Positions 40 to 48,179 of a DNA stretch of 64,000 nucleotides are shown here, piece after piece (the stretch's first letter is position 1; each line of letters begins with the position of its first letter). Made by a program: the position numbers and the translations under genes. Source of the stretch: Lytechinus pictus. Taxonomy: Eukaryota. Location: contig NC_087246.1 in assembly GCF_037042905.1 (NCBI RefSeq), positions 62,496,001 to 62,560,000 on the forward strand. The letters are read 5' to 3'. The notes under the pieces are model-generated. The model did no database searches. It worked only from the letters and a program-made list of their open reading frames with translations, and was not told the origin of the DNA.

Positions 40-650
40 TTAAAGGTCAAGTCCACCCCAGCAAAACGTTGATTTGAATAAATAGAGAAAAATCAAACTA
101 GCATAACACTGAAAATTTCATCAAAATCGGATGTAAAATAAGAAAGTTATGGCATTTTAAAGTTTCGCTGATTTTTCATAAAACAGTGATGTGCACAACT
201 CAGAGACATGCAAATGAGACAGTTGATGATGTCCATCACTCACTATTTCTTTTGTTTTTTATTGTTTGAATTATACAATATTTCATTTTTTACAGATTTG
301 ACCGTAGGGACCGACTTGACTGAACCATATAGTGTCTAACAATGCTAATTCCTTATGTATAGGGAGGAATTAATTACTGTTTCTCTTGACAATGAGGAGA
401 AATTTAGAATATTTCATATATCATATAATAAAATACAAAAGAAATAGTGAGTGGATGACGTCATCAGTCTCCTCATTTGCATACCGACCAGGACGTGCAT
501 ACAACTGTTTTGTGAAATTAAGCGAAACTTTGAAATGTCATAACTTTCTTATTTTACATCCGATTTTGATGAAATTTTCAATGTTATGCTTGTTGGATTT
601 TTCTCTTCTTATTCAAATAATTTTTTTGTTGGGGTGGACTTGTCCTTTAA
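40..650. mobile_element. Non-autonomous Kolobok/T2-type MITE (TTAA target duplication, AGG termini)
   Basis: TTAA|AGGTCAAGTCCACCCC at 40 and GGGGTGGACTTGTCCT|TTAA ending at 650; imperfect inverted repeats of about 130 bp; a second copy lies inverted at 41660-42246. Confidence 0.85.
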
Positions 651-685
651 CCATTACATTTTTTATATATCTTTTTTCTTTTCAG

Positions 686-3600
686 ATGAACTGATGAAAT
701 TGAATCTGCTGATTTATGCCTGCCCTGTATGCAAGAAGTATTCCTTTGATCCTCAGCAGATGACCAATCATGCAAGGACAGCACACGAGGGTAAAGTTGG
801 TGTTATGCTTATGTTGCCGCTCCCAGACGTCAATTTACCCAAGCTTGCATCCCCACAAAAACAGCAAGTATTAGCATCACCTCCGCCAACCAGGGTTGTG
901 AGCCCGGCTGCAGAGGGAAACAAGACAATGTATCGCTGCGACAAGTGTGATAGACAGTTTGATCGTGCTAGACAGATGAATATGCACAGATGTCTCCAGA
1001 TGAACAGGAGGAAGTCATCGCCCCGCAGGGGAGAGGAAAGCACATTATCAAAATCCCCCAGTAGAGCAGAAGAAATGTTAACGCTAATGACTCCCAAAGA
1101 GAACAAGAAAGAGTCAGAATCAGAAACAGTCACATCTCACTTGGTCATTGTTGAGAATGAAGCGACAAACACTGATAAAATTAAAGAAAGTGGGGTGGAA
1201 GATGGGAAGAAGATTCCCCCAATACCTCCCAAGACTGCTACTGATCTTGTTGACACTGAATCTCCACAGCAGTTTGGAGACAGCCCTACCAAAGTAAGAA
1301 GCTTTGACGAGGATCCCATGGATAATGGCATTGATGATGATGGTGATGATGATGATGATGGTATACCACCTACACTAGGTGTCCATCTAAGTAAAGACAT
1401 ACCACCAGAGGACAGAGCTGGCACATGGAAACTCTGCAAAAGAAAACATGTGACAGGGTGGAAGTGGGAAGCACAGAAAGTGTCTGATGAAGAGATGAAG
1501 CAGATAGCTGAACAGGAAAATGAGAAAAGGGAAATGGACATGATTGAGAAGGCGAAGAATGAAAAGGAGAAGAGCAAAATGGAGAGAAATAAGGAGGACA
1601 GTGAAAAGGTAGAAGGTGAAAAAGAGGAGAGCAAGAAAGAGGAGGATGAAAAGGAGAGTGGAAAGGAGGAGAGCAAAGAGGATAAGAGCATAGAGGAGAA
1701 TAGTGAAGCTGAAGAGACACACAATCAGATAGATAAGATAGGCAGTCAGGTAAATATTCCTTCTACAGTATTGGGAGAAGATGATGATTACGAGTTTTGT
1801 GAAGATGATTATGTAGAGGATAATGATGATGATGAACCTGTTCCTTTTATACACAACCCAGAAGTGGGAAAGAAAATTGACCCTGATTCATTAATTGGCA
1901 AGTACCAAGCACTATCTGATATACTAGACGATGATATGATGAAGCAGTGGGCTAACAAGGATCCACCTACAGTTGATGAGTTAAGCAAATATATCAAAAA
2001 AGTACACGGTGGACTACAGAGTCCTAATGGGGAAGCTCTTGATTTTTTCATGTGTCTTATATGTCGCAAGGTGTTCAAGACTAAGAATGTTATGACTCCT
2101 CATATATTTTCTCACATCGGATATCGTCCTTACATGTGTGTGCAGTGCGGATACAGTTCTACTCACAAACGTGGCTGGACAACTCACATACAGAAACATA
2201 ATGATAATGAACTCAAGTGCTGGCATGGTCAATGTGTTTATGTTGGAAAGGATGCAGAGGATCTTGATGAGCATAGGAAGACCCACGCTCCATCCTTACG
2301 TTGCATTCTTTGCGATGTAAAGTTCAAAGGTCAAAGCACCATGCTTGGTCATCTGTACATCAGCCATCGGGAGGAAATCAGGGAAGGAAAAGGGAAAGAA
2401 TTCTACACATTAATGGCCACAGCTGGGCGAGCAAAGAGTCAGATTGTTTTATTTGAGTGTGATATTTGTGGGCAGAAGTGCAAGACAAAGAAGAGCTACT
2501 ACACTCATATAAGAATGAATCATGCCCCACAATCTGGCTCAAAGAAAGCTAAAGGACGAAAGAATAAAAATGGAGAAAAAAAGAAGAGGAAGAGGGTGAA
2601 GAAGCGCTCATCTTCCCGCAACTGTCCTATGTGTGGAATGGCGTTTGAAGGTGAAGTAAAATTGACACGTCACTTGAACACGCATCCTTTTATCTACCGT
2701 TGCTCTATGTGTGAAGAGAAGTTCTTGACATATGGCGCACTTAATGAGCATGTTGGATTCCACAGGGCTGATCAGGAAGGAGAGTTCAACCCTCAAGACA
2801 AAATCAATGAGAGTCTACGAAGGAGTATCTACTTGGCTGGGCAGATGGATAAAGCACTGGAAGCAGACAAGGTACAATGGGCGCAGCGCAGAACCGGAGC
2901 AGAAGCACCTAAGAGTGCGATGACAGGCTCCATCTTTGATGATTTAATGTCAAAGATCAGTATTCCTACTGAAATTGTAAGCAAAGAAGAACTAGAGGAA
3001 GTTGGGGAAGACTTTGTCAATCTGAATTACAAAAAACTGACCCCTTCCATATTACGATATATACATTTACGCTTTGGGAATGTTGAATGTGGAGTTTGTG
3101 GGAAACTCTTCCCCAAGGTTGGACTATGTAAGGATCATACTAAGAAGCATACAAAGGTGAAGGACTGCAAATGCCCCCATTGTGATTTTCAAGGTAAAAA
3201 TAAGAAGGCTCTTGAAAGTCATTTGGCCAGGGTCCACAATGAAGGTGAATCTTTCCATTGTCCTAAATGTGATACCAACATAATAGGTGCCGAGCTTTAC
3301 AAGCATCACATGAGGAGACATGCTAAAGAAGACTCTGGACCTTACACATGCACTTGGTGCAACACGGTTGAAGGGAAAAGGGAGGATATGAAGAATCATA
3401 TCATGAACACGCACCCTATGATGCCATTGGCCGAGAGTACTAAGATACTGGGACAGGGGGTTGTCATCCATAGAGAGAAGGGAGCCCCTTTCTTGGTGTG
3501 TGAGGTGTGTAATGAAACCTTCCGCCGTATTTGTGATCTTCGCCGTCACATGTGGAAACATTCTTCTGTGAAGCGATTCACCTGTGATCTCTGTGACTAT

Positions 3601-4296
3601 GGCTCTGACAAGCGTGGAAACATCATAAGCCACATGAGGAAGCACTCGACTGAGAAGCAAGCAGCCTGCCATGTCTGTGGGAAGATGTACAAGACAATGC
3701 AGAGCCTGAAGCTTCATGTCCAAACTGCCCACTTGAAGTTGAAGCCGCACAAATGTGACCTCTGTGATTATGCTGCTGCCCAGCCAGTCCATTTACGTCG
3801 GCATGTTGTCCTCCACCACAACACTGGAGAGCGCCGTCGATTCCGCTGTGCCATCTGTCCCGACTACAGGGCAACTGATCTGCAGGTTGTGAAACGGCAC
3901 TACCAGAAGAAGCATCCCAATCAGAAGATGAACCTCTCCAAGTGCTGTCCACCTGATGCATTCAACCCATCCACTATGAAGAAAGACAAACACCAGGTTA
4001 TCCAGGTGGTGCCATCTGTACCTTCTCTGAATGAAACACCTGCTGTCAATCATGACACACCGATGCTGCCTGAGTCAACTCAAGAGATGGACCATGAGCA
4101 AGTGAACCAATCTAACGAAATGGATCCCGCCATAGTTGAGGTACAGACAGAACAACATCAAGAAATTCCTCAAGACATGACAGTTGAGGTCATTCTCCCG
4201 GAGGATCAAGGCCAGCTGATTGATATCAATTCTTCTCTTCCAGATGTTATCAATGCTTTAGCTTCACTTCAAGATTCTGAAATCATCTCTCAGTAA
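686..4296 (+). CDS. Last coding exon of a multi-C2H2 zinc-finger protein (about 20 fingers, acidic/charged linker, basic NLS-like KKKRKRVKKR); upstream exons lie outside the window
   Basis: Open frame of about 1200 codons with repeated CxxC...HxxxH motifs and linkers such as HIGYRPYMC and HLKLKPHKC; polypyrimidine tract and ttttcag acceptor at 685 (phase 1); TAA at 4294-4296. Confidence 0.92.
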
Positions 4297-16519: not shown

Positions 16520-17203
16520 ATGGCATCATCAGTTAAGTCCTCTCCGTTGCTTGGACGCAACATCAAGCAAGAGGCTGTTGTACATGTGATCTGCAAGTCT
16601 CCACCCAGTGAATTGTCAGCAAGTAGCGCTTCCTCATTTGTACCACCTGTAACAGGCAAAGAGGTAGTTGTTGTCACTGAAGACATGCCATCAACGAGCA
16701 ACTCACCATCAGGACAGGAGACTGGCCAATCAAAAAACATGTGTCCTGACTCTACGGGCATCGACTCGGCCAAAGATGAACGCAAGGCTGGCGGCGGGAA
16801 GGTAGGAAGCAGTTCCAAGAAGAAGATGTGCGAGAAGGACAGCGACGAGTACAAACGCCGCAGGGAGCGCAACAATGAGGCAGTGCGGAAGAGTCGGCAG
16901 AAGAGCCGACAGAAGGCCAGCGAGACGGAGATGCGAGTGACAGAGCTGAAGAAGGAGAATGCAGACCTGGAGCAGAGGGTCACCTTGCTCCACAAGGAGC
17001 TGGAGCTACTGAAGGACCTGTTCCTGACTCATGCTAATGAGCTCCCAGATCCAAGTACCACTTTTGGGCTCTTCAGTGCTAACCCAAACCTGGGGTCCAG
17101 TTCTCCTAACCCAGCCCTCTCTCGTGTTGTCCTTAAAACTGATACCTTGACTGTGTCCTTGTCCTGTAAGAATGTCCCAGAGAGCATCACTACCACAACA
17201 TGA
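16520..17203 (+). CDS. CEBPG: CCAAT/enhancer-binding protein gamma (bZIP)
   Basis: C/EBP basic region DSDEYKRRRERNNEAVRKSR followed by a leucine zipper ending ELELLKDLF; short protein with no C/EBP alpha/beta-type activation domain; single coding exon. Confidence 0.9.
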   Translation: MASSVKSSPLLGRNIKQEAVVHVICKSPPSELSASSASSFVPPVTGKEVVVVTEDMPSTSNSPSGQETGQSKNMCPDSTGIDSAKDERKAGGGKVGSSSKKKMCEKDSDEYKRRRERNNEAVRKSRQKSRQKASETEMRVTELKKENADLEQRVTLLHKELELLKDLFLTHANELPDPSTTFGLFSANPNLGSSSPNPALSRVVLKTDTLTVSLSCKNVPESITTTT

Positions 17204-24926: not shown

Positions 24927-25296
24927 GTATCCATGGAGATAGCACTACGGGGAGCGCCCTCGCCGTAACGACAACACAAGCTTCGCCAGTTTGCCATTAG
25001 CAATCAACGAGGTCACGGAGGCCTGACGTGTGGAATTTTTCTCAGCGACAAAGAACTCAGAAATCAACCGAAAATGTTCAAAAATACGTTTCAAAGTGGA
25101 TTCCTGTCGATTCTATACAGCATCGGCAGCAAACCCCTTCAGATCTGGGATAAGAAGGTGAGTTTTGGGGTATTTTTGACGATTTTATTATAATGGGGAA
25201 TCCGGCATGCGCGCCTTTCTTGTCAACGAGTACACCCCTCCATATTGGTTGTGGTAGTGGTATGCATGCACGGAGAAAGGGGTGTTGCTTAGCAGC
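24927..25296 (+). promoter_or_regulatory. CFAP20-A promoter and intron-1 RFX X-box-like motifs
   Basis: GTATCCATGGAGAT (24927-24940) and GTTGCTTAGCAGC (25284-25296) in a CpG-rich patch around exon 1. Confidence 0.5.
25074..25157 (+). CDS. CFAP20: CFAP20 copy A, coding exon 1 ([28 protein letters not shown])
   Basis: Manual translation matches the conserved CFAP20/BUG22 N-terminus; donor GTGAG. Confidence 0.96.
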
Positions 25297-26182
25297 AGCA
25301 ATGGAGGAGCGATCATGTGCCAAACAGTAACCCGCTGGTCCCGGTGCCTCTGATTTATGTTGTATCCTCTTAGGAATGGTTGTGATTTCTACTGTTTTGT
25401 TGATATGATTAAAAAAGGAATCATATATATGTTTCTTAAACCTGATTCAATTAAATCAATTTCTTTCAATTGTATATCCAAATACAACATACATGTACAT
25501 GTTAATTTGGGAAGCCAGAATCCAATTTCACTTTTCATGTTTTTTATGAATCGTGATTCTGAAGAAATGTGGATGTGTGAAACCAATAAACCCTCTTCAC
25601 TTTTGATAATCCAAAGTAAATTGCAGAAATTAGAAATCTGTTGAAAATACTTTAGTTCATTTTCAGAACCTAACTCTGATTCAGCCTGAAAGGAAAATTC
25701 AAAGTTATGAGTTTATTATTCCATTGTCAGATAAATTATTTCTAAACTCTAAATTTAAAGTTATTTTGTCAATCATGAATGTTTTTTTTTAATTCTGGTT
25801 GCTATGATTGATTATTATTTGTTATTTAGGATTTTTTTTATTATTATAAGTTGTGCTTGATAGAATTCTTGGTTTCTTTGTTGTGATATAGCCTATACAT
25901 AGTAGTTTATATCCTTCTTCCCCTTGATTGTGACAAACAGCTTTTATGATAATTATACCTTAATATTGATAAGTAGTATATAAATAGTATATTAACCATT
26001 GAAACTTTTTTTTTATTTTAGTGACGGTACATATGAAATTCTACTAGAGTCAAGAATTGTACAATGTATTATGTTTTGTTTCTGTTATATATTCCACTTA
26101 AGCCTTAATGAAAGATAAGGAATATCAATATATATAATTTTACTGATTTTGATGAATTTTCATTTTTTTTCCCCCTTAACAG

Positions 26183-26497
26183 GTCAGAAATGGACACATA
26201 AAAAGAATAACTGATAACGACATCCAGTCATTAGTTCTTGAAATAGTCGGCACAAATGTTAGTACCACATTCATCACATGTCCTTCAGAACCAAAAAAGA
26301 CCCTTGGTATCAAGCTCCCATTTTTAGTCATGATCATCAAGAATCTCAAGAAGTACTTCACGTTTGAGGTCCAGGTTCTCGACGATAAGAACGTCAGGAG
26401 ACGTTTCAGGGCGAGCAACTACCAGAGTACGACGCGTGTCAAGCCTTTCATCTGCACAATGCCCATGAGACTAGATGACGGCTGGAATCAAATTCAG
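26183..26497 (+). CDS. CFAP20: CFAP20 copy A, coding exon 2 (VRNGHIK...GWNQIQ)
   Basis: Canonical AG/GT boundaries, 105 codons of CFAP20 sequence. Confidence 0.96.
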
Positions 26498-27185
26498 GTA
26501 GTTATTTTGTTTTATTGAAATAATTTGAAAGTATTGATTATTATTTATAAGTTTATGTCACTTATTTACATGCCAAGTTTGTCTCTTTTAGTATTATTAC
26601 ATCTTTGCCGACCCTATTATGAGGCCTAATCATCTCTATAAAATGTATATTTTTACCCTCAAACAAGTTCATACCCTACAATTTTTGGTAATACGGGTGA
26701 AATCCATTTCAGTATAGAGCGATTCACATTTTGTCAATTCCCTTTCGAACAAAAAAAATCTGAGAAATGTATCTGAGTATGAAATTATATTGATAGCACA
26801 TGTATTGAAATTTATCAGTAGGCATAATTACTTTTGCCCCTTTTATTGGGTTGAAAGTGATATTGTATACAAAATTAGACTTAGTAATATATTTTTTTTC
26901 AATTAAATGGATGATTATTCAATAGTGATATGCTACTCAACATTGTAAATGCTAGGAAGCTCTATCAGCGGAACAAATATGAAAGTGGGGGGGGGGGGAC
27001 TGACCATGCAAACAATCGCAATCAGATGGTAATTTTTACTTTTTTGTACACAGTTTAAAAAAAGTGGTGGCTGAAACCCACCCAGTGCCCCCCCCCCCCC
27101 CCCCGGTTCTGTGGGCCCTAATTCAGATGTTATCTCACTACCATTTTCTATTAACGATTCCTGTTTTTCTCCCTTTAACACACAG

Positions 27186-27251
27186 TTTAATCTATCAGAT
27201 TTCACAAGGAGAGCATATGGAACAAACTATATTGAGACATTGCGAGTTCAG
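27186..27251 (+). CDS. CFAP20: CFAP20 copy A, coding exon 3 ([22 protein letters not shown])
   Basis: Canonical splice sites, in frame. Confidence 0.95.
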
Positions 27252-28205
27252 GTATGTTTCATCTCTTTTTCCAATCTCCAAATATGATTCATTTAGTTTT
27301 GTTATTCCCACATTTAAGTGAAAACACCAAGAAATTTTATTAAAATTAGATATCAAATCATTGAAGCATTAATGCAATGATGAACATTAATATATATATT
27401 TCCATCTGCTGTGTTGATGTGTATGATTTCCTTGTATTCTGAGCTTTAAAGGGAATTCTGGAGCATGATTCAATTTGAAAAGGTGCAAAAAAAGTCCAGC
27501 AATGAAGCCCAGTGATATTTCATTTTTAAGCTGTGTTTTATAACATTATCCAGGCATGCAACATACTTTTGGTGGCAGGAGTGGGATGTGATATAGATTG
27601 AATGACAACTAAAGGCCATGGATGTGTTATTTATTTACTAATAGTTGATATGAGCATCTTGTGAGGATCAAAACCAATGCAGTGTTGCTTCAATGTCTTT
27701 GAACCTAGTGCCATGCTGAATAAGACTGTAATCTAGATAAATGAAGGCACTTGCAGTACATGTCAATTTCATAAGAAAGACTGTAAAACCAAGGGTAATT
27801 ATCAGTGTTATCACAGATCTAAATCTGGTACAGCTACATTAACTGAACAATAACACTCTCCATCAATAAAAGATTGAAAAAAAGGATAAAGAAATCAGGA
27901 AATCTAAGCTGAAAAATAATCACACTGAATATCACCAACACAGATAAGCACATGTTGTGGAACAGAGTATTATATTGCTTGGGAAAAGACCTAACATTGT
28001 GCTCGAAATTCATGCTTGTTTTTCATATTTCTCAGCAATTACACAATTTCTTCCAGAATCCTTTGGCACATACACCTTAGTGGTCATTTGATTGGATTCT
28101 GTACCATAGGCATTAAAAATATATTTCATTTACAAGTCATTGAGTTTTTTTAGTTTTCAACTTAGTATTTCCATTGTTTTTTAAATTTTATTCACCCTTG
28201 TACAG

Positions 28206-28328
28206 ATCCATGCTAACTGCCGAATCCGACGAGTATACTTCTCCGACAGACTGTATTCAGAAGACGAACTACCTGCAGAATTCAAACTTTACTTGCCTGT
28301 TCAGAAGGGTACCAACCAAAGGAGTTAA
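28206..28328 (+). CDS. CFAP20: CFAP20 copy A, coding exon 4 (IHANCRIRR...[11 protein letters not shown]); 195 aa in total
   Basis: Acceptor tacag, conserved C-terminus, TAA at 28326-28328. Confidence 0.95.
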
Positions 28329-30509
28329 ACCCCCCAATGGGTATGGACATTCAAAGTGAAAGCAAAGACACTTTAGAACTCATTGTCAGCAATAGGGAAG
28401 AACCGATCCACATTGTTGACAAAAACCTCATTCAACTTTTCAGCCCTCATGCAGAGAAGTCGAACGTCTATGGTACGACTACTGTCGTGATCTGCGTATC
28501 GTTTTGATAAAGCAGGGTCGTTGATCCCTTCTTCAATTTGCGCCAAGAGAGGTGTAACAAAGTTTAAAGTGTATCTCTCTTTAACATGTGTTAGTGAGGC
28601 AAGTCTTAACTCAAAATGATATTTATGATTGTGAAATCCTGTCTAGTTTGTCAGGAAATTAGGTGAGCTTACCTTAGCAATAACTGCCAAGGAAATTGAA
28701 AAGATTTGCGATTGTCTAATGTGAACGAATATGTTCATAACTAGGCTGATGGACTGAAACTCGAGAAAATATGTTGAAATCAAAGCAGGCCTTTGCTATT
28801 TCCATTGCTCTCCCTTTTTCAGATGTTATGGAAATGGTTCCTTATTTAGATCTTGGATTCATGCTAAATGATCTTAATGAAAAGCATGCAATTGTAACAC
28901 TGAGCTTTCTCTTCATTTTAGGACTGCTTTTACCCCCAGTTTGTTATACATTCAAGACTTTATATGCATGTACCAGTACTTGAATTGAAAGCTGTAGAGA
29001 AAGGGCAACCATGATCGAGTGACATCTGATTTGAAATTCTTTCAAAGACTATCTACAAGAAATGAACAAAGAATGTTGGTCACTTACAAAATGCCTAATT
29101 GAAAGTCACCTTATGCTTTATTTCATTGTTAATGTAGCTGTTATAACATAAGTACTGTATGGTATATTGTATTTTTGTCTGTGTTTGTCTGTGCAGTCTG
29201 GCACTTGAGTCAAAGTTCATTAAATTACTATTCACTCCTTTGCATGCTTAGTACAGGTATTCACAGTTTGTGCTAATTGTTGCTACATTTTTAGTTGAAC
29301 AAAAAGTTGGTCACTATTAAACATCACATCATAATTTGGTCATAGATTGTATAGTGAGTTTAAATATGTATGTCAATAATGTCACCAAAGCTGACTAAAA
29401 ATGGGCTGCATGTCTTCATGAATTCTCAAAGCCATTATGAATCGATCAAGATAAGGAATTGTCCTTTGGATACAAGATTATATTGCTCTGCAATGATTTT
29501 TGGAAAATTAGTTAGTTTTTCAATACAACTCTAGGGTTATGCTAACTGATGATTCAAAGTTTCAAACGGTCCATTACAAATGCTCTACTTTTTTTCTTCA
29601 TTTTGATGTATGAAAATCTTTGGTGGTTAGAGGGAAACTGGGAATCAATCATCTCTTTTTTTCCTAAATAGGTAATATATTTAGCGTAATACATTAATTT
29701 ATTTAATTATAAAAAGTAATATGATTGAATTTGTTACTTTTAATACACTCTTTGCCTAAATATCAAATGAAGGACAATGCAAGTCTAGTAGACTAGAAAA
29801 GTTATCTGACATTTGTACTGTAATCTAGGGTAAGCTTATTGTGTATATAAATATCTCAAAATGACATTAATATGCCTGTAAATATATATATGTTATGTAA
29901 CTAAAGATTATGTCATGTAACCATGTTACAATACTCAGAAATATTTATGTTCTCTTCAGGCTTTTTCATATCAGACCATGATTTGACATGTGCTGATTCT
30001 AATAATCCAAATAGTTATTTTCTGAATTTAAATGTAAAAGAAGTTAGATCATGTTTACATATTAACTTTGTATTATGAACAGTGTTTTTAATGAGATGGT
30101 GCCATGTGATGTCTTTTTAAATTACATATCTTTATTCTATTATTTGGTTTTATCAACCTTATTTGCCTTAGGTTTTGAAGATTTTGTATTCAAAATGCAC
30201 CATCAAAAGCACTGTGCATAAGATAATAATATATGTTGTACTCTTACTATTATTTAAGTAATTGCTCTGCTCTTATGGAGTGCAGGATAACTTATTTTAA
30301 ATCACTGAGAATTGTCAATTATGTTCATGTAATCTGTGTACAATCAGATTCTACTTTGTCTTTTTTATATAGTTCAAGACAAAAATACACTTTATAAACA
30401 TGAAAGTTCTTGGCCTGTTATAGAAGTGAATTACTTTGTGCTTTGGTGAAATTTGTTTGAATTTTTGATAGTGTGGATGGTCCATAAATATCAGAATGAT
30501 TAAGGAAAT

Positions 30510-30702
30510 ATGGTGGTGATAAAGTTGATGATAATGGTGTGATGATGGTGGTGGTGATGGTAGTGATGATAATGACTGTGATGATATGGATGGTGTGTTG
30601 ATGATGATGATTGTGGTGGTGGTGATGATAGTGCTGATGAAAATGATGATATTGATTATTCTGGTTGTGAATGGGGTTGTGATGATTATGATGGTAATAA
30701 TA
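30510..30702. repeat. Degenerate (GAT/GGT)n microsatellite
   Basis: Triplet run. Confidence 0.85.
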
Positions 30703-30730
30703 AATTTCATTTGATATATATCTGTATGTC

Positions 30731-30773
30731 AGTCATGATCAAGAATCTCAAGTACTTCATGTTTTAGGTCTAG
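30731..30773 (+). pseudogene. Short relic fragment of CFAP20 exon sequence
   Basis: agtcatgatc---aagaatctcaag---tacttcatgttttaggtctag aligns to agtcatgatcatcaagaatctcaagaagtacttcacgtttgaggtccag of copy A exon 2. Confidence 0.65.
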
Positions 30774-33662
30774 CGGGATGTATAAGCTATTTAAATCCCT
30801 GCTTCTGACTGGTTGAGAGTAAATTTCACTGACAAGATGCTTCATTATCTCACAAATGAATTTGGTCTGATACCATTTTGCACAATAACCATTTGGTCCA
30901 TCAGTCAATTTGTCCGTGTAGTGGTCTAACTGCAATTGGTCTTATTTAAGTTTCTCTAAACTAACCTATTACCTCTCATAACCAAATGATCCAATTACTC
31001 TTGGTTTATTTATCATTTGGTATGGATGACAACGCGTTTTAAATATTTTACTATTTGCATTAAAAAAATGTTTTTCATTCTTTTCTTCTGAGTGGAGGGG
31101 TACAGTAAGGCAAAAACCATAGACATTGTTTTTTTTTGGGGGGTAAACAATATAGTGGCAAAATGTACCAACTTTATTATCCCACACCCATTCATGAAAT
31201 ACTGGATTTGCTACTGTCGCCCATATCAATTCTTTAATTTTATCTCTTACTTTACCTTCAATTACATATCTTTAAGTTTCTCTTTAACTAGTTTATGTTT
31301 CACACACACACACACACTCTCTAACACTTCTTTCCTATATTGCTCATCAAGTTTCATGCATTGTTCTTCCCGTTCCCTCAACTTTTATTTCAATTTTTCT
31401 TATTTCCTCATTCTTTTATTCCCTTTCCTTCCCCTTATTACTCTCGCATTCCACATATCATATTCCCCCACCCATTCACATCTATTTCATTCACTCTTTC
31501 CTCTTCAATCTCCCTAATTTCCAATTCAATTCTTCTGTTTTTCTCTTTCTTCTCTCTTTCTCTATCAATCACATTCCCTTCCAATGCTTTCACTGATTTA
31601 TGTTTCACAGTTCACACTCTCTCTTTTCAAGTTGTATTTCCTTTATTTTTCATCTAATTTTCCCATCTTTTGAATTTACTCTCAGCATAAGAACCTAATT
31701 CTTTAATCAATGCCTTTTAAAATAAATGCCACTGGATTGACAAGGCCTTGCATCTCTCTCTCTCTCTCTTTTTTTTTTGGGGGGGGGGTATCACTTTTTT
31801 AATAACAGACAACATCTCATGATTTCTTGTATTGTGCCATGTTAAAGAGGGACTTTCCAATTAGATAGTATTTATATATCTGACTTGTTTTCTCAACTTC
31901 CCAAACTCCTGAGGGTTCAATTTAAATCAGGTCTAAAGCTGTGTTATCAATATGGGAAGCCAATCACACAAATTCTTCAAAGTGCAGGTTCAACTTATCA
32001 GCTAATATGACACACAAATTATTCATAAATGTCTGGAGATCAATATCTTAAAATAGTTTTGTACCCCAATGATGCAAGAGAAAAGAAAACCGTAAAATGT
32101 TGGAAACGTAAAATGTTAACAAAATTTTGACATTTTGGTTTCCCATAATTTTCTAACAGAGCTAAACCATGGCACATTAAGTTGAACTGGACTTCAGAAT
32201 AAGGGCCACGGCTTTTTGAAATACAATGTTCAGTTGCCTGGGCAGTAATAAATGGAATACAAGAAGGAGACCATGTATTAAGTGAATTTTAAATAAATAT
32301 ATTTGAACATGAATTGTAACAATGCATAACAAGAGAAACATGCAACTTTAAGTCAATATAAGCATGGACTCATAACATGCTATTCCGTACTTAAAATTTG
32401 AATGAAAGAAATATTTACACCCTATTAATATAAGTATATACAAGTGAGGTATCTACCTCAACATTAAATTTCAGTTAAAACAACCACCAAAATAAAAAGA
32501 AAATAAATTGAAAATGAAAAAAAAATCTTAAATCCATTACATTTGACATACAAGTTGTGTCTCACACACAAATATATATGAATCAGTGTTCATTACTAAG
32601 AATAAATGCCTAACCCACAATTTGGCAATGCAGCATAAATAAATACACCACAAACAGTTTCAACATTTTCTTGAACATATAACTGTATCAAAGTAAACAC
32701 AAGTCCTTTGGTAATATGAGGTCAATACATTTGCTTGTCAATCAAAAAATTAATTAAGATAAAAATTTTCCAAAACAATTCTTATACTAGGGTCTGTAAA
32801 ATACTGTAACTTGATTCCAATGCCATGTGCAATATTGTTTTCCTTGGTGATTTTCTAACAAGGTTTCAAAACAAGTAAACATGTGCTCAATTAACATTTC
32901 CACTAACTTATGGTCATTACACACCTTGCAATTCGTCTATGCCCCAATAGTAAAAGAACATGTATTGCATATTTTGTAATGATATTGTAAATAGCTTTTT
33001 ATTTATTTAAGGTTCAGAATAACTATTTGAACACAAATGTCAATTTGTTATTGAAAGTTCAGAGCAATCGCCAAATTGGCTTAAGTCGTAGTCAATTGTA
33101 CAATTGCTATGATGTCATTACTACTTTAGAGTGAATTTGCTTTTATATTTATGAGGAATGAAATAACAATTTAATGCTACCTAATGATATCTAGAAATTT
33201 GGACAGTAGTATAGAACATGTTTTAATTTTCACATCAAATGTTAGAACACTTTTCTCTCCAAATCGAGTCATAAACCAGTTGTAAGGTATCCATTGGTTA
33301 TTACATGAATCCAAGTGCATACATCTGTTTGCTGAAGCATATTCTCCTTAGCACATAATTATAAATTCTAGACACTGAATTCATTTACTTCTTTCTCTAT
33401 TTGCCTAGGACCCTGATATCTAAAACCTTACTGAGTCAAATTGCACCAAAACATTTTTCAAACAATTCAACATTTCCCATTCATAGTAATATCAAGAAGA
33501 TAATTTCATAAAACAATTTTCTCCTCTAAAGTGAGAAGAAGGCGCACCATGAGTTTGCGTGAAGCACAAAATGTCTTCCAGCGACATTGTAATGTTCTTG
33601 TACATTGTCCAAAACAAATTTGATTTGGTATTGCAAGTCTTTTGTATGTTCAAGGTTCTCCG

Positions 33663-33785
33663 CTAATTCTTGGTTGCCATACCCTTTTGAATGGGCAAAT
33701 AGAGTTTGAATTCAGCAGGCAATTCGTCTTCTGAGTACAGTCTATCAGAGAAGTATACTCTTCGGATACGACAGTTGGCATGGAT
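33663..33785 (-). CDS. CFAP20: CFAP20 copy B, coding exon 5 (IHANCRIRR...[11 protein letters not shown]); 195 aa in total
   Basis: Reverse-strand translation; acceptor cccag; stop TAG. Confidence 0.95.
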
Positions 33786-34267
33786 CTGGGGAGAAAAAAC
33801 AAAATGTGCCAGACAATTAGTTAACTAGATATCTTACTGAAAAGATAAGAATGTAATTCAAATAGCCTGCACACATTAACTAGAAGTATAATTATTAGAG
33901 AACCTTTAAGAGACACTTTTGCATTAACCTCCAATCCTGAATAAGTTGTTAAAGTTAAGCTAATCAATACAATATCTAATTCAATAATATAATTAAAAAT
34001 ATTAAAATAATACTTATTAATGGAAACTGAAAATGCTTGAATAATTATAGTTATCATTCGTGTAGGCTAATGGTACATCCAGACTTTTTCCTTCAAATTA
34101 TGAGAATTTCAAAGAATAACAATTGTTTTCAATTCGAAGGGTGAAATCTTACTTGAGAAAAATGGAAAGTTCTGTACGTGAATCAAGTAAGAAGATTTTA
34201 CTAAACAAAGGTGTTGATTTTTAAATCATAAATCTAGTATTTTGTAAAAATAAATGATATTACTTAC

Positions 34268-34333
34268 ATTTACTCTAATGGTCTCAATGTAGTTCGTTCC
34301 ATATGCTCTCCTTGTGAAATCTGACAAGTTGAA
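34268..34333 (-). CDS. CFAP20: CFAP20 copy B, coding exon 4 ([22 protein letters not shown])
   Basis: Canonical AG and GTAAG boundaries, 66 nt. Confidence 0.95.
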
Positions 34334-34539
34334 CTGTTTGATATAAACAAAATGAAAAAATATGGATTATAAAGTGCTGAAAGTAGACCCTACATGTATG
34401 TCGATATGCTTTGTTGTTCAGAAATAAAATATTCATGTTGAAGATCTGCAACCAATGTCTCCATCAATGTTATACAAAATAATAGTAAAATTTTATAGTG
34501 CTGAATACTATGTTGGCATGCATGCACACAATTCATTTA

Positions 34540-34722
34540 CTTTCTCCACTCCCTGGGGAGCATTCCAATAAGAGTTCCAAAACTCATTTATCAACTTGGT
34601 GGAGAGTGGCAAAATGTGGATTGACGCCTTGTCAAAGAGCACTACATGTAGGCTGCGATGGGATTCAATCAAACACACACGACCCTCTGATTACAAGGTG
34701 AGAGTCTGAACCACTACACAAT
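34540..34722 (-). mobile_element. Partial, degraded tRNA-derived SINE, family 2
   Basis: Matches the 44354-44711 copy (tggagagtggcaaa..tgtggattgacg; cacacgaccctctgattacaagg). Confidence 0.75.
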
Positions 34723-35410
34723 GATAATGATCAAAAGACAACCTAGTCATGATTTCCATGTAACTACCACAGTAGCAAAGTTGCCTTCAATGTGCAAGGC
34801 CCTTCTTTTGCCCCAACCCCCCCCCCCCCCCACAAAAGAATTGGAGTATGTACATGCATGAACGGTTTCAGAAGGAATTCTACGAAGAGAAAAAAACGTA
34901 ATTCAGCAAAGAATATGTAATCAAAGACAATTCTGTTCATTTGTCAATTTCAAAGATACTGCACAAGTCTAAAAACATTAAAACACATCAAGAAAGTACA
35001 TAACACAAAGAAATTAACAGTCATTGAAATTTTAAATTATTTCAAAACATTGTTAAATATGTGAGGATAATTACTTCACTTCAGAACAAGGAGGTTTCAT
35101 TTTAATACATCTTTGTTATGAATGAGCCTAAGGCTTCGCTGCCCATTCCCCCAAGCAAAAAGTGCCAATCACATACATTTATTTCATTCCAGAAATCAAA
35201 GAAACTCCAATGAAAGTTATGTTGTTGGAAACTTATTTACTGAAAAAGAAAATCAACTTTTGTTAATTATCTTTTAGGGGATAGCATCCCCCAAGCCCAA
35301 ACCAGTGCACCAGTGTAAAAAAAAGAAGACCAACACCCTCTTATTCAGAAAACAAATCCCTCTAAAACCAAAGTTCTTCCATGAAATACAAATTGAGAGT
35401 AAATAACTAC

Positions 35411-35645
35411 CTGAATTTGATTCCAGCCGTCATCTAGTCTCATGGGCATTGTGCAGATGAAAGGCTTGACACGCGTCGTACTTTGGTAGTTGCTCGCCCT
35501 GAAACGTCTCCTGACGTTCTTGTCGTCTAGCACCTGAACCTCAAACGTGAAGTACTTCTTGAGATTCTTGATGATCATGACTAAAAATGGGAGCTTGATA
35601 CCAAGGGTCTTTTTTGCATCAGATGGACATTCAATCAAAGTTGTG
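35411..35645 (-). CDS. CFAP20: CFAP20 copy B, coding exon 3 ([16 protein letters not shown]...GWNQIQ)
   Basis: Acceptor cacag, phase 2; donor GTAGTT; 235 nt. Confidence 0.95.
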
Positions 35646-35984
35646 CTGTGGGCAAATGAGAGATTTTTATAATATGGAGTTACCAGGTAAGCATTTTCAA
35701 CCAACAGAGAATTGCACAAAAAACATCTAGGGGTCTCCATTTCTTTAATGCTTTAAATATCTCTCTTACAATGATTTGTACTACCAATTCCTGAATACCA
35801 AGAACATAAAAAATTGTATCAACCACTAGAAAGATAGAACAGTACATTTAAAATGGATGACAATGATGATGATAATGACAACAATCACTCACTTGATAAC
35901 AGTCACAAAAAATTTTAAGATAACATCTTTAATATTTTAGCAACTACGAGAGAATCTTCAACAATAAATTCTTAAAAATAATTG

Positions 35985-36080
35985 TAATGATAATGATGAT
36001 GTCAATAATGATAATGATAATAATAATAATGACAATAATGATAATAATAATCATAATAATAACAATGACAATAATAATAG
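35985..36080. repeat. (AAT/GAT)n microsatellite in the copy-B-specific intron
   Basis: Triplet run. Confidence 0.85.
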
Positions 36081-36303
36081 AAGATTCTAAGTTATAAAGT
36101 GCAAAGAGAGGATACAAAGAAAAAATTTGAACTGTAAAATATAGATTAGAAACATGTGAAGCAAGTTTATTATGAATAGGGTCTTGATCTAAACAAAGAA
36201 ATAACACTGGAAACAATTCCTACAAGTCAAAATTGAAAATAAATATAGATTAATCCTGAATACAATCATTTCAAAATTGAAAATAGAACAAAAAAAAACT
36301 TAC

Positions 36304-36383
36304 CTGACATTTGTTCCTACAATTTCCAGTACAAGTGACTGGATGTCATTGTCTGTGATTCTTTTGATATGGCCATTCCTCAC
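36304..36383 (-). CDS. CFAP20: CFAP20 copy B, coding exon 2 ([27 protein letters not shown])
   Basis: 80-nt exon with AG and GTAAG boundaries. Confidence 0.95.
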
Positions 36384-36637
36384 CTAAAACAAATAAATGA
36401 AAATAAAGTCACACACAAAAAAAATCAAATCTACTCTTAATTTGTGAGAAGCGTAGCTGCGGGGTACTAAAAGACAAGTTTAACTTCCTGATTTCAACTT
36501 CTTATCTTCAATTCTATTTTCATGTGGTTATCATCTTCCTGTTCCTTACTCCACTTAAGGTCCAATTCCGACTCAAGGAATACAAGACTCAGAGAATAGG
36601 AACCAAGTCCTGTTAAAAAAAAATTCTGCATATTGTC

Positions 36638-36726
36638 TACCTCGGGCGATGTTCGTGCAGGCTAGGTGGAGCGTAGTGTAGCGGTAGTGAAGTGGAGTGG
36701 AGCCTGCACGAACATCGCCTGAGGTA
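36638..36726. mobile_element. 89-bp hairpin mini-element with a 9-bp target duplication (CATATTGTC)
   Basis: 26-bp inverted repeat with one mismatch; CATATTGTC at 36629-36637 and 36727-36735. Confidence 0.8.
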
Positions 36727-37012
36727 CATATTGTCTAAATATGTACTAGTGAGTCTATCCACACATTTGTCCAGACACACTGAAAAGCAGTAGATTCTTT
36801 CTCACAAGATAAATCAGCTGCATGTCTTAATCTCTAAAAGTTAAAATCTGTAGTCTGCCCATTTTGGCAAGCTTCTCAAGATAGACCATGGTTCTGACAG
36901 AAGCCACCCCGCTACCCCGGGCGTTGTTATGCACAGAAAATATGGTCTGCAAAATCATTTGCTGCTGAATAAAAACACCTTACAATTTTTAATTTGGAAC
37001 ATCCAAACTCAC

Positions 37013-37096
37013 CTTTTTATCCCATATCTGCAAAGGTTTACTGCCTATGCTGTATAATATGGACAAAAATCCACTCTGGAATGTGTTTTTGAACAT
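37013..37096 (-). CDS. CFAP20: CFAP20 copy B, coding exon 1 ([28 protein letters not shown])
   Basis: Reverse-strand translation identical to the copy A exon 1 peptide; donor GTGAG. Confidence 0.96.
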
Positions 37097-37169: not shown

Positions 37170-37293
37170 TTGTTGCTAACTGACAGCACTATTTTGTGTT
37201 TTGCGAGAATACACACATCACACACGTGTGTTTCGCACTAGTGACTTATCACAATAGACCCATGGTCGCTTAGTTACGTAGTGAATGGCAACG
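37170..37293 (-). promoter_or_regulatory. CFAP20-B promoter with RFX X-box-like motifs
   Basis: GTCGCTTAGTTAC (37265-37277) plus GTTGCTA and TGGCAAC half-sites just upstream of the ATG. Confidence 0.5.

Positions 37294-47834: not shown

Positions 47835-48179
<345 letters not shown>

What the first reader, a model, noticed from the sequence alone, without database searches (positions are those of the whole stretch)
25074..37096. Two intact, anciently diverged CFAP20 paralogues in a tail-to-tail pair
Seen: two complete 195-aa CFAP20 genes on opposite strands, with 5.3 kb between their stop codons and all splice sites canonical. Exon 1 differs at 16 of 84 nt, all synonymous, and the introns do not align, so the duplication is old and both copies are under purifying selection. 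Protein differences (A/B) are F58L, T60E, E64D, P65A, L152I, Q155N, V187I and the last 5 residues. Established: CFAP20 (BUG22/FAP20) is an extremely conserved doublet-microtubule inner-junction protein that alternates with PACRG and is usually single-copy in animals. Inference: the copies may be specialised, for example sperm flagellum versus embryonic cilia, or axonemal versus nuclear roles.
Basis: partly seen in the sequence, partly recalled or inferred. Interest (0 to 1): 0.8.

Follow-up and report, generated by a model that had tools for sequence, protein, structure and literature searches.

The report
Old duplicated CFAP20 pair, sea urchin
A sea-urchin chromosome carries two intact, tail-to-tail copies of the very conserved cilium gene CFAP20: one keeps the ancestral protein, and the other is an altered version nearly identical to the CFAP20 modelled in sea-urchin sperm tails, which makes this a real but moderately interesting lineage-specific duplication.

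Summary
There are two complete 195-aa CFAP20 genes on opposite strands, with 5,334 bp between their stops and GT..AG at all introns. They differ at 12 residues and at 88 of 588 nt.

New findings:
- **Intron loss in A.** Copy A has 4 exons and copy B has 5. The sea cucumber gene has B's structure, so A lost an intron.
- **Old duplication.** Outside one tract, synonymous sites are saturated (pS 0.75) and dN is 0.04.
- **Gene conversion.** A 206-nt stretch of the large exon has dS of only 0.135. It is not constrained between species. It stops just short of the paralogue-specific loop.
- **A is ancestral-like, B is derived.** B carries L58, E60, I152 and N155. L58 and E60 occur in none of 215 other CFAP20s; I152 occurs in two and N155 in one.
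- **B matches a solved structure.** B is 193/195 identical to the CFAP20 chain in PDB 8SNB, the sea-urchin sperm doublet.
- **A occurs in other urchins.** A-type genes sit at the same place in Lytechinus variegatus and in a strongylocentrotid-like contig.

The duplication therefore predates the split of those urchin families.

The parts
25074..25157 (+). CFAP20-A exon 1 (codons 1-28)
   Evidence: ATG in an A-rich Kozak context and a GT donor. Identical protein to PDB CFAP20 chains, residues 1-28.
26183..26497 (+). CFAP20-A exon 2 (codons 29-133). It is the fusion of ancestral exons 2 and 3; the lost-intron site lies between 26262 and 26263.
   Evidence: AG/GT boundaries. Pfam PF05018 at 170 bits. 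The same fused exon occurs in L. variegatus and in the strongylocentrotid-like ORF P0014.
27186..27251 (+). CFAP20-A exon 3 (codons 134-155, ...IETLRVQ)
   Evidence: Identical to mammalian CFAP20 residues 134-155.
28206..28328 (+). CFAP20-A exon 4 (codons 156-195 plus the TAA stop)
37013..37096 (-). CFAP20-B exon 1
36304..36383 (-). CFAP20-B exon 2 (codons 29-54 plus 2 nt)
   Evidence: The same exon exists in the sea cucumber (L004 10988-11067).
35646..36303 (-). CFAP20-B intron 2 (phase 2, 658 nt). This is the ancestral intron that copy A has lost.
   Evidence: GT..AG. An intron at the identical position and phase occurs in Apostichopus japonicus. It is also implied by the read-through or boundary ORFs P0131 and P0128.
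35411..35645 (-). CFAP20-B exon 3 (codons 55-133, begins [12 protein letters not shown])
34268..34333 (-). CFAP20-B exon 4 (codons 134-155, ...IETIRVN)
   Evidence: Identical to 8snb_3A residues 134-155.
33663..33785 (-). CFAP20-B exon 5 (codons 156-195 plus the TAG stop)
   Evidence: Identical to 8snb_3A residues 156-195.
26292..26507 (+). Gene-conversion tract, A arm (CDS nt 194-399 plus 10 nt of the following intron)
   Evidence: 97.6% identity over 206 nt against about 80% elsewhere. dS is 0.135 against saturated. Fisher p = 1.6e-9.
35401..35616 (-). Gene-conversion tract, B arm
   Evidence: Same calls as for the A arm. The tract ends one codon short of the paralogue-specific loop (codons 58-65).
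28329..33662 (.). 5,334-bp spacer between the two stop codons. No similarity between the two 3' flanks.
   Evidence: No convincing ORF.

Best explanation
**Shown**
- This is an inverted (tail-to-tail) tandem duplication of the inner-junction gene CFAP20.
- It arose in the sea-urchin lineage after the split from sea cucumbers (less secure) and before the Lytechinus and strongylocentrotid families separated.
- Both copies are intact and under strong purifying selection.
- Copy B keeps the ancestral five-exon structure, but its protein is the derived one. It has L58, E60, I152, N155 and its own five-residue C-terminal tail.
- Copy A lost intron 2 but keeps the ancestral, vertebrate-like protein.
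- A 206-nt stretch of the large exon has been homogenised between the copies by gene conversion. This happened a little before the two Lytechinus species split. The tract stops just 3' of the paralogue-specific loop.
- The B type is the CFAP20 built into the sea-urchin sperm doublet-microtubule model (8SNB).

**Inferred**
- B is the sperm-flagellar inner-junction subunit, alternating with PACRG between protofilaments A1 and B10.
- A serves embryonic and somatic cilia and/or the other CFAP20 sites.
- On this reading the pair is a cell-type paralogue replacement, driven by divergent regulation plus a few surface changes in B.
For: **Gene models and differences:**

**Age**
- Only exons align between the copies.
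- pS = 0.75 outside the tract, as saturated as urchin against cucumber.

**Selection**
- dN = 0.043 outside the tract.
- A against L. variegatus A: dS = 0.075, dN = 0.003.
- B is 193/195 identical to 8snb_3A.

**Polarity**
- Among 215 CFAP20s from across eukaryotes, none has L58 or E60, two have I152 and one has N155.
- A has the common residue at each of these sites.
- The cucumber has Y58, L152, Q155 and V187.

**Intron loss in A**
- The cucumber gene has B's five exons.

**Distribution**
- An A-type gene lies downstream of C/EBPgamma in L. variegatus and in a strongylocentrotid-like contig.
- No second copy lies within 10 kb in the cucumber.
- A and B share a derived QKG+5 tail against the cucumber's QNKAK.

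**Conversion**
- Third-position differences are 5/68 in the tract against 62/128 elsewhere, p = 1.6e-9.
- The tract is not slow between orthologues: A against LvA gives dS 0.105 inside and 0.055 outside. Urchin against cucumber gives pS about 1.0 in the tract.

**Sperm link**
- 8SNB is the 48-nm sea-urchin sperm doublet.
- All 7 CFAP20 chains in it share the one B-type sequence.

**Plausibility**
- Sperm-specific paralogue replacements of axonemal proteins are known but few.
- The inner junction is reported to be the most stressed part of a deformed sperm doublet.
Against: - I found no expression or proteomic data for either copy in this species.
- I could not read the paper that deposited 8SNB. 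I therefore do not know whether the B type was chosen on density or mass spectrometry, or merely taken as one of two database entries.
- Nothing shows that A is absent from sperm or that B is absent from embryos.
- B differs at only four conserved positions, and three of the changes are conservative (F/Y to L, L to I, Q to N). A functional difference is not required to explain retention.
- The B orthologue was seen only as a PDB protein sequence. The B locus could not be fetched from L. variegatus or any other genome.
- The upper age bound rests on one sea cucumber locus and a shared tail motif.
Confidence: 0.55

Rival explanations
1. This is a redundant or dosage duplicate. Both genes are expressed wherever cilia or flagella are built and their products are interchangeable at the inner junction. 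The pair is kept because sea urchins need very large amounts of CFAP20 (ciliated blastulae, cilia regeneration, sperm). B's substitutions are nearly neutral drift in a tolerant loop and strand.
For: - The proteins are 94% identical, and identical over all PACRG-contact residues reported for FAP20.
- Residues 63-66 vary freely among species and between orthologues.
- Ongoing gene conversion shows that the copies still exchange sequence.
- Both 5' regions carry a weak X-box-like site.
Against: - The four B-specific residues sit at positions that are almost invariant across eukaryotes. They are conserved between two urchin families, while synonymous sites are saturated.
- I152 and N155 flank R153, where a human missense variant causes disease.
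- The conversion tract stops just short of the B-specific loop.
- Upstream regions share no alignable sequence.
- Only the B type is modelled in 8SNB.
Confidence: 0.3
2. The copies divide the work by site rather than by cell type. Both are in the same axoneme, but they occupy different CFAP20 positions: inner junction versus central apparatus versus the ARMH1-CFAP20-DNALI1 site on the doublet surface. This would be analogous to the PACRGA/PACRGB and CFAP106A/B paralogues of trypanosomatids.
For: - CFAP20 has at least three distinct binding sites in mammalian sperm axonemes.
- Paralogous inner-junction proteins with fixed positions exist in trypanosomatids.
- B's changes are few and local, as expected for an altered partner surface.
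Against: - All seven CFAP20 chains in the 48-nm sperm doublet model are the same B-type sequence, so there is no alternation at the inner junction.
- No urchin central-apparatus or doublet-surface model was available to check.
- There is no direct evidence of any kind.
Confidence: 0.1
3. The pair is an artefact or a dead copy. Either it is an assembly duplication (haplotigs collapsed side by side), or one copy is an unexpressed pseudogene in waiting.
For: None beyond the general frequency of assembly duplications in highly heterozygous urchin genomes.
Against: - The copies differ in exon number, have non-alignable introns and saturated synonymous sites. That is far beyond allelic divergence.
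- The A type is found at the syntenic place in another species' assembly, and the B type in a solved structure.
- Both ORFs and all 14 splice sites are intact, with dN/dS below 0.06.
Confidence: 0.02

Closest known systems
CFAP20 / FAP20 / BUG22 (Pfam PF05018), the inner-junction protein of doublet microtubules
   Same: - Both copies are full-length, single-domain CFA20 proteins of 195 aa.
- They are collinear with every solved CFAP20 chain.
- K20, H33-R36, T38, Y86, R102, R113 and R153 are all preserved.
   Different: - There are two genes instead of one.
- B carries L58, E60, I152 and N155, which are absent or nearly absent from 215 other family members.
- Both have an urchin-specific QKG+5 C-terminal tail.
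PDB 8SNB chain 3A ('CFA20 domain-containing protein', sea-urchin sperm 48-nm doublet)
   Same: Copy B is 193/195 identical to it, and shares all B-specific residues and the whole C-terminal tail.
   Different: - Two loop residues differ (S63A, K66R), so it comes from another urchin species (Strongylocentrotus purpuratus by my recollection).
- Copy A differs from it at 14 positions.
Sperm-specific paralogue replacements in mammalian axonemes (RSPH6A for RSPH4A, CIMIP2A/B, DNAH8/17 for DNAH5/9, CCDC63 for ODAD1)
   Same: - Two paralogues exist for one structural position.
- One of them is found in the sperm structure.
- The differences are small, and their purpose is unclear even with structures in hand.
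   Different: - Differential expression is not shown here.
- The lineage is an invertebrate.
- The protein is one of the universal 'core MIPs', for which I found no description of such a replacement in the papers I searched.
Trypanosomatid inner-junction paralogues PACRGA/PACRGB and CFAP106A/B
   Same: These are lineage-specific duplications of inner-junction components.
   Different: - Those paralogues alternate within one axoneme.
- There the duplicated proteins are CFAP20's neighbours at the inner junction (PACRG, CFAP106), and CFAP20 stays single.
- In the urchin sperm model, all CFAP20 sites carry one sequence.
Interlocus gene conversion between inverted tandem duplicates (concerted evolution of part of a gene)
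   Same: - There is a sharply bounded tract of near-identity inside otherwise saturated paralogues.
- The tract is not explained by constraint.
   Different: - The tract is short (206 nt).
- It is bounded on one side by non-homologous intron and on the other by the paralogue-specific loop.
- The high GC3 of the tract is not a conversion signature, because the single-copy cucumber gene has it too.

Membership tests
CFAP20/FAP20/BUG22 (PF05018) | Match to the Pfam CFA20 domain above the gathering score | tested here: met
   A exon 2 scores 170 bits and B exon 3 scores 125 bits (cut-off 24). The C-terminal exons score 45.5 bits each. Together the matches cover profile positions 30-184 of 185.
CFAP20/FAP20/BUG22 (PF05018) | A protein of about 190-195 aa, collinear from end to end with solved CFAP20 chains | tested here: met
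   Every exon aligns without gaps to residues 1-28, 29-133, 134-155 and 156-189/195 of the bovine, human, Chlamydomonas, Tetrahymena and urchin chains.
CFAP20/FAP20/BUG22 (PF05018) | PACRG-contact residues reported for FAP20 (K20, strand H33-R36, T38) are preserved | tested here: met
   The residues come from PMC6994238. A and B are identical to each other and to mammals over residues 1-49.
CFAP20/FAP20/BUG22 (PF05018) | Residues hit by human pathogenic missense variants (Y86, R102, R113, R153) are preserved | tested here: met
   The variants come from PMC9633640. All four residues are present in both translations. In B, R153 is flanked by the derived I152 and N155.
CFAP20/FAP20/BUG22 (PF05018) | Physical location at the A1-B10 inner junction of doublet microtubules | not testable with these tools
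   By proxy only. B's orthologue (193/195) is a chain of the sea-urchin sperm doublet model 8SNB. There are no data for A.
Sperm-specific paralogue replacing a general axonemal protein | One paralogue is present in the sperm axoneme | tested here: inconclusive
   The B-type sequence is the only CFAP20 in 8SNB, at 7 chains. The basis on which the depositors chose it could not be read.
Sperm-specific paralogue replacing a general axonemal protein | Reciprocal, tissue-restricted expression of the two paralogues | not testable with these tools
   No transcriptome or proteome could be queried. Full-length spliced proteins could not be handed to the exact-match look-ups.
Paralogues with interlocus gene conversion | A contiguous tract with far lower synonymous divergence than the rest of the gene | tested here: met
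   dS is 0.135 in codons 66-133 against saturated (pS 0.75) outside. Fisher p = 1.6e-9.
Paralogues with interlocus gene conversion | The low divergence is not due to constraint on synonymous sites | tested here: met
   A against L. variegatus A gives dS 0.105 in the tract and 0.055 outside (small counts, 4 against 3 changes). Urchin against sea cucumber gives pS about 1.0 in the tract.

The most novel reading that the evidence does not exclude
Sea urchins build the inner junction of the sperm flagellum with a dedicated CFAP20 isoform (B: L58, E60, I152, N155 and its own outward-facing C-terminal tail). Embryonic and somatic cilia use the ancestral isoform (A). That would be a cell-type paralogue replacement of a universal core microtubule inner protein. 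It would sit in a genetically tractable urchin for which a sperm doublet structure from a related urchin species already exists. Gene conversion would be kept out of the few codons that distinguish the two.
Probability: 0.35. Interest if true: 0.6.

Novelty: new member of a known kind. Interest (0 to 1): 0.42.

Why it matters
CFAP20 is one of the most conserved proteins of the axoneme and one of the few 'core' microtubule inner proteins. It is normally treated as a single invariant part. A recent structural survey states that it is unclear why sperm and epithelial cilia use different paralogues for a handful of axonemal proteins.

A conserved A/B pair that differs at only four otherwise near-invariant positions would give a minimal system for that question. 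One member is already placed in a sperm doublet structure from a related urchin. Swapping four residues or the tail, or knocking out one copy in Lytechinus, would allow separate read-outs of larval swimming and sperm motility.

The locus is also a clean small example of three processes acting on one gene pair: asymmetric protein evolution, precise intron loss and bounded gene conversion.

If expression turns out not to differ, this is simply an old, redundant tandem duplicate.

Tried and rejected
1. **GC-biased gene conversion.** GC3 is 0.67 in the tract against 0.41 outside (p = 0.0005), which looked like a conversion footprint. I rejected this because the single-copy sea cucumber gene shows the same contrast, 0.62 against 0.41.

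2. **Urchin orthologues from the large protein database.** I searched with exon pieces of A and B. Neither the window's proteins nor any B-type protein appeared. The 90% clusters merge most animal CFAP20s, and only representatives are listed.

3. **Full-length spliced proteins.** These could not be passed by reference, and I did not type them. The exact-match look-ups (clusters, encoding contigs, transcript contigs) were therefore unavailable for A and B. As a result, the B locus of L. variegatus and any RNA-derived contigs could not be fetched.

4. **Strongylocentrotid-like ENA contig.** It carries C/EBPgamma and A-type CFAP20, but no DNA is held for it.

5. **Diadema antillarum C/EBPgamma locus.** No CFAP20 lies within 10 kb, so this was uninformative.

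6. **The paper behind 8SNB.** It is not held.

7. **RFX X-box scan.** There was nothing at one mismatch or fewer near either start. At two mismatches or fewer there is one site upstream of each gene, against 0.26 expected per 300 bp. This is too weak to use.

8. **Possible relic of a third copy at 30731-30769.** It is a 45-column gapped alignment (39 nt on the spacer side) at 82% identity to CDS nt 228-275. It abuts low-complexity sequence and has no companion fragments, so it is unproven.

9. **CK2alpha identity of the sea cucumber kinase.** I could not confirm that the kinase upstream of the cucumber gene is CK2alpha.


Full report
**1. Observation**

I rebuilt both genes from the raw sequence.
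- Copy A lies on the + strand: 25074-25157, 26183-26497, 27186-27251 and 28206-28328.
- Copy B lies on the - strand: 37096-37013, 36383-36304, 35645-35411, 34333-34268 and 33785-33663.

Both give 195-aa open reading frames. All seven introns are GT..AG, and both ATGs have A at -3. The stops are 5,334 bp apart.

The CDSs differ at 88 of 588 nt, which makes 64 synonymous and 12 non-synonymous codons. Exon 1 differs at 16 of 84 nt, all synonymous. A blastn of each gene with 3 kb of 5' flank and 2.5 kb of 3' flank finds only the exons. All exon pieces hit Pfam PF05018, and they align collinearly with every solved CFAP20 chain.

**2.

*Exon structure.* A has four exons and B has five. B has a 658-nt phase-2 intron after codon 54, and A lacks it. 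The sea cucumber Apostichopus japonicus has a CFAP20 gene with exactly B's five exons, including that intron (L004). Two unrelated database ORFs also betray an intron at that spot (P0131, P0128). A therefore lost the intron. The loss is shared by L. variegatus and by a strongylocentrotid-like contig (P0014).

*Uneven divergence.* Third-position differences are 5/68 in CDS nt 196-399 against 62/128 elsewhere (Fisher p = 1.6e-9). By Nei-Gojobori the tract (codons 66-133) has dS = 0.135 and dN = 0. The rest has pS = 0.75, which is saturated, and dN = 0.043 without the tail.

Constraint does not explain the tract, for two reasons.
- Between window A and L. variegatus A the tract is, if anything, faster: dS 0.105 against 0.055. 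The counts are small.
- Between urchin and cucumber its synonymous sites are fully saturated.

The explanation is interlocus gene conversion. The ratio 0.135 against 0.075-0.105 dates it to a little before the two Lytechinus species split. The tract runs 10 nt into the downstream intron, and it ends one codon 3' of the paralogue-specific loop.

I first read the high GC3 of the tract as biased conversion. I withdrew that reading because the single-copy cucumber gene has the same GC3 contrast.

**3. Where it comes from and who else has it**

The intronless bZIP gene at 16520-17203 is in NCBI. It lies on a 70.6-Mb chromosome of GCA_037042905.1, which I recall as Lytechinus pictus. It is 95% identical to the L. 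variegatus protein.

In L. variegatus the same C/EBPgamma-like gene is followed about 7.7 kb downstream by an A-type CFAP20, annotated as 195 aa. I could read its first three exons, which differ from window A at 8 of 465 nt and at one residue, K66R.

An ENA contig carries a bZIP protein 92% identical to that of Mesocentrotus nudus. About 7.5 kb downstream it has an A-type fused exon with F58 and T60.

The B type turns up in the PDB. Chain 3A of 8SNB, the 48-nm doublet of sea-urchin sperm, is 195 aa long and is identical to window B at 193 positions. The matches include L58, E60, D64, A65, I152, N155, I187 and the whole tail. Only S63A and K66R differ. Both paralogues therefore predate the split of the Lytechinus and strongylocentrotid lineages. 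From memory, that split is usually put near 50 Myr.

The cucumber locus has no second copy within 10 kb on either side, and its tail is the vertebrate-like QNKAK. A and B share a derived QKG+5 tail. This points to a duplication on the echinoid stem or later. The evidence for that upper bound is thin.

**4. Polarity**

I aligned 215 CFAP20 sequences sampled across eukaryotes.

| Position | Residues in the sample | A | B |
|---|---|---|---|
| 58 | Y or F in 209 | F | L (in none) |
| 60 | T in 174 | T | E (in none) |
| 152 | L in 166 | L | I (in 2) |
| 155 | Q in 156 | Q | N (in 1) |

A has the common residue each time. With the cucumber as outgroup, B has four unique changes, A has none, and three sites are ambiguous.

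Residues 63-66 form a freely variable loop. The C-terminus of FAP20 points to the outside of the doublet. I152 and N155 flank R153, where a human missense variant causes retinal dystrophy. Evolution has thus been asymmetric. B is the changed copy even though it kept the old gene structure.

**5. How it most likely works**

*Shown.* The pair consists of two functional genes under purifying selection. They have unrelated flanking sequence and one bounded conversion tract. The B type is the sequence placed at all seven CFAP20 positions of the sperm doublet model.

*Inferred.* B is the sperm-flagellar inner-junction subunit, and A supplies embryonic and somatic cilia. This would be a paralogue replacement of the kind known for a few mammalian axonemal proteins.

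A selective reason is conceivable. The inner junction is reported as the most stressed part of a deformed sperm doublet. CFAP20 also has further binding sites, in the central apparatus and on the doublet surface.

I put this reading at about 0.55. Simple redundancy or dosage stands at about 0.3, and division by axonemal site at about 0.1. An artefact or pseudogene is essentially excluded.

**6. Comparison with what is known, and novelty**

Both copies meet every testable defining feature of the CFAP20 family. Gene A is annotated in the two Lytechinus assemblies I could see. The B protein sequence of another urchin is in the PDB under a generic name.

My literature searches found no description of a CFAP20 duplication in echinoderms or of paralogue-specific residues. 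I searched for CFAP20 with sea urchin, CFAP20 with paralog, Bug22 with evolution, and the full protein name with urchin. The deposited structure's own paper could not be read.

I class this as a new member of a known kind, namely a lineage-specific paralogue of a known family. It has a testable, moderately interesting functional hypothesis.

**7. Limits**

- I could not obtain expression or proteomic data.
- I could not fetch the B locus from another genome.
- I could not map the substitutions onto coordinates.
- Counts in several comparisons are small: 3-7 substitutions in the orthologue comparisons.
- The species names for GCA_037042905.1 and for 8SNB come from my memory, not from a tool.

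Noticed in passing
window 16520-17203 (+): An intronless 227-aa bZIP gene, C/EBPgamma-like (Pfam bZIP_1/bZIP_2). It is the conserved upstream neighbour of CFAP20-A in two Lytechinus genomes and in a strongylocentrotid-like contig. In Diadema antillarum the orthologue has no CFAP20 within 10 kb.
   Followed up: partly
window ~48090-48179 (+): The first coding exon of casein kinase II alpha (E = 1.5e-14 to PDB CK2alpha chains). It lies 11 kb from the 5' end of CFAP20-B, in divergent orientation. In the sea cucumber a protein-kinase gene lies upstream of CFAP20 on the same strand; I could not confirm that it is CK2alpha. From memory, human CFAP20 is also next to CSNK2A2, so this may be old microsynteny with an inversion in urchins.
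   Followed up: partly
window 30731-30769 (+): A short stretch in the spacer between the two genes resembles CDS nt 228-275 of CFAP20. It has 15-nt and 11-nt exact blocks and 82% identity with two 3-nt gaps, and it reads TAG where the gene has a Glu (GAG) codon. It could be a relic of a third, decayed copy, or it could be chance next to ATC-rich low complexity.
   Followed up: partly
window 24990-25004 and 37265-37277: One weak X-box-like (RFX) site, with 2 mismatches, lies within 300 bp upstream of each CFAP20 start. The expectation is 0.26 per 300 bp. Otherwise the two upstream regions share no sequence.
   Followed up: partly
L004 ~14027 (Apostichopus japonicus MRZV01000605.1): The sea cucumber assembly has a frameshift at codon 164 in the last CFAP20 exon. 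The annotated protein (P0025) also starts inside intron 1. The database protein is therefore wrong at both ends.
   Followed up: yes
P0014 (strongylocentrotid-like A-type exon) against 8snb_3A: The A-type loop in that urchin reads GDAN, with the Asp-Ala that the B type has (SDAK or ADAR). Lytechinus A reads SEPK. This may mean that the conversion tract reaches two or three codons further 5' in that lineage, or that the change arose in parallel.
   Followed up: no
window 586-4296 (+): A 1,236-aa open reading frame in one piece with many C2H2 zinc-finger-like Cys/His motifs (judged by eye). This exact sequence is not in the protein collection, so the annotated gene probably has other ends.
   Followed up: no
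window 30351-30710 and 35944-36216: ATC/ATT-rich microsatellite-like low complexity (runs of Ile/Thr codons in translation). One stretch lies in the intergenic spacer and one lies inside intron 2 of CFAP20-B.
   Followed up: no
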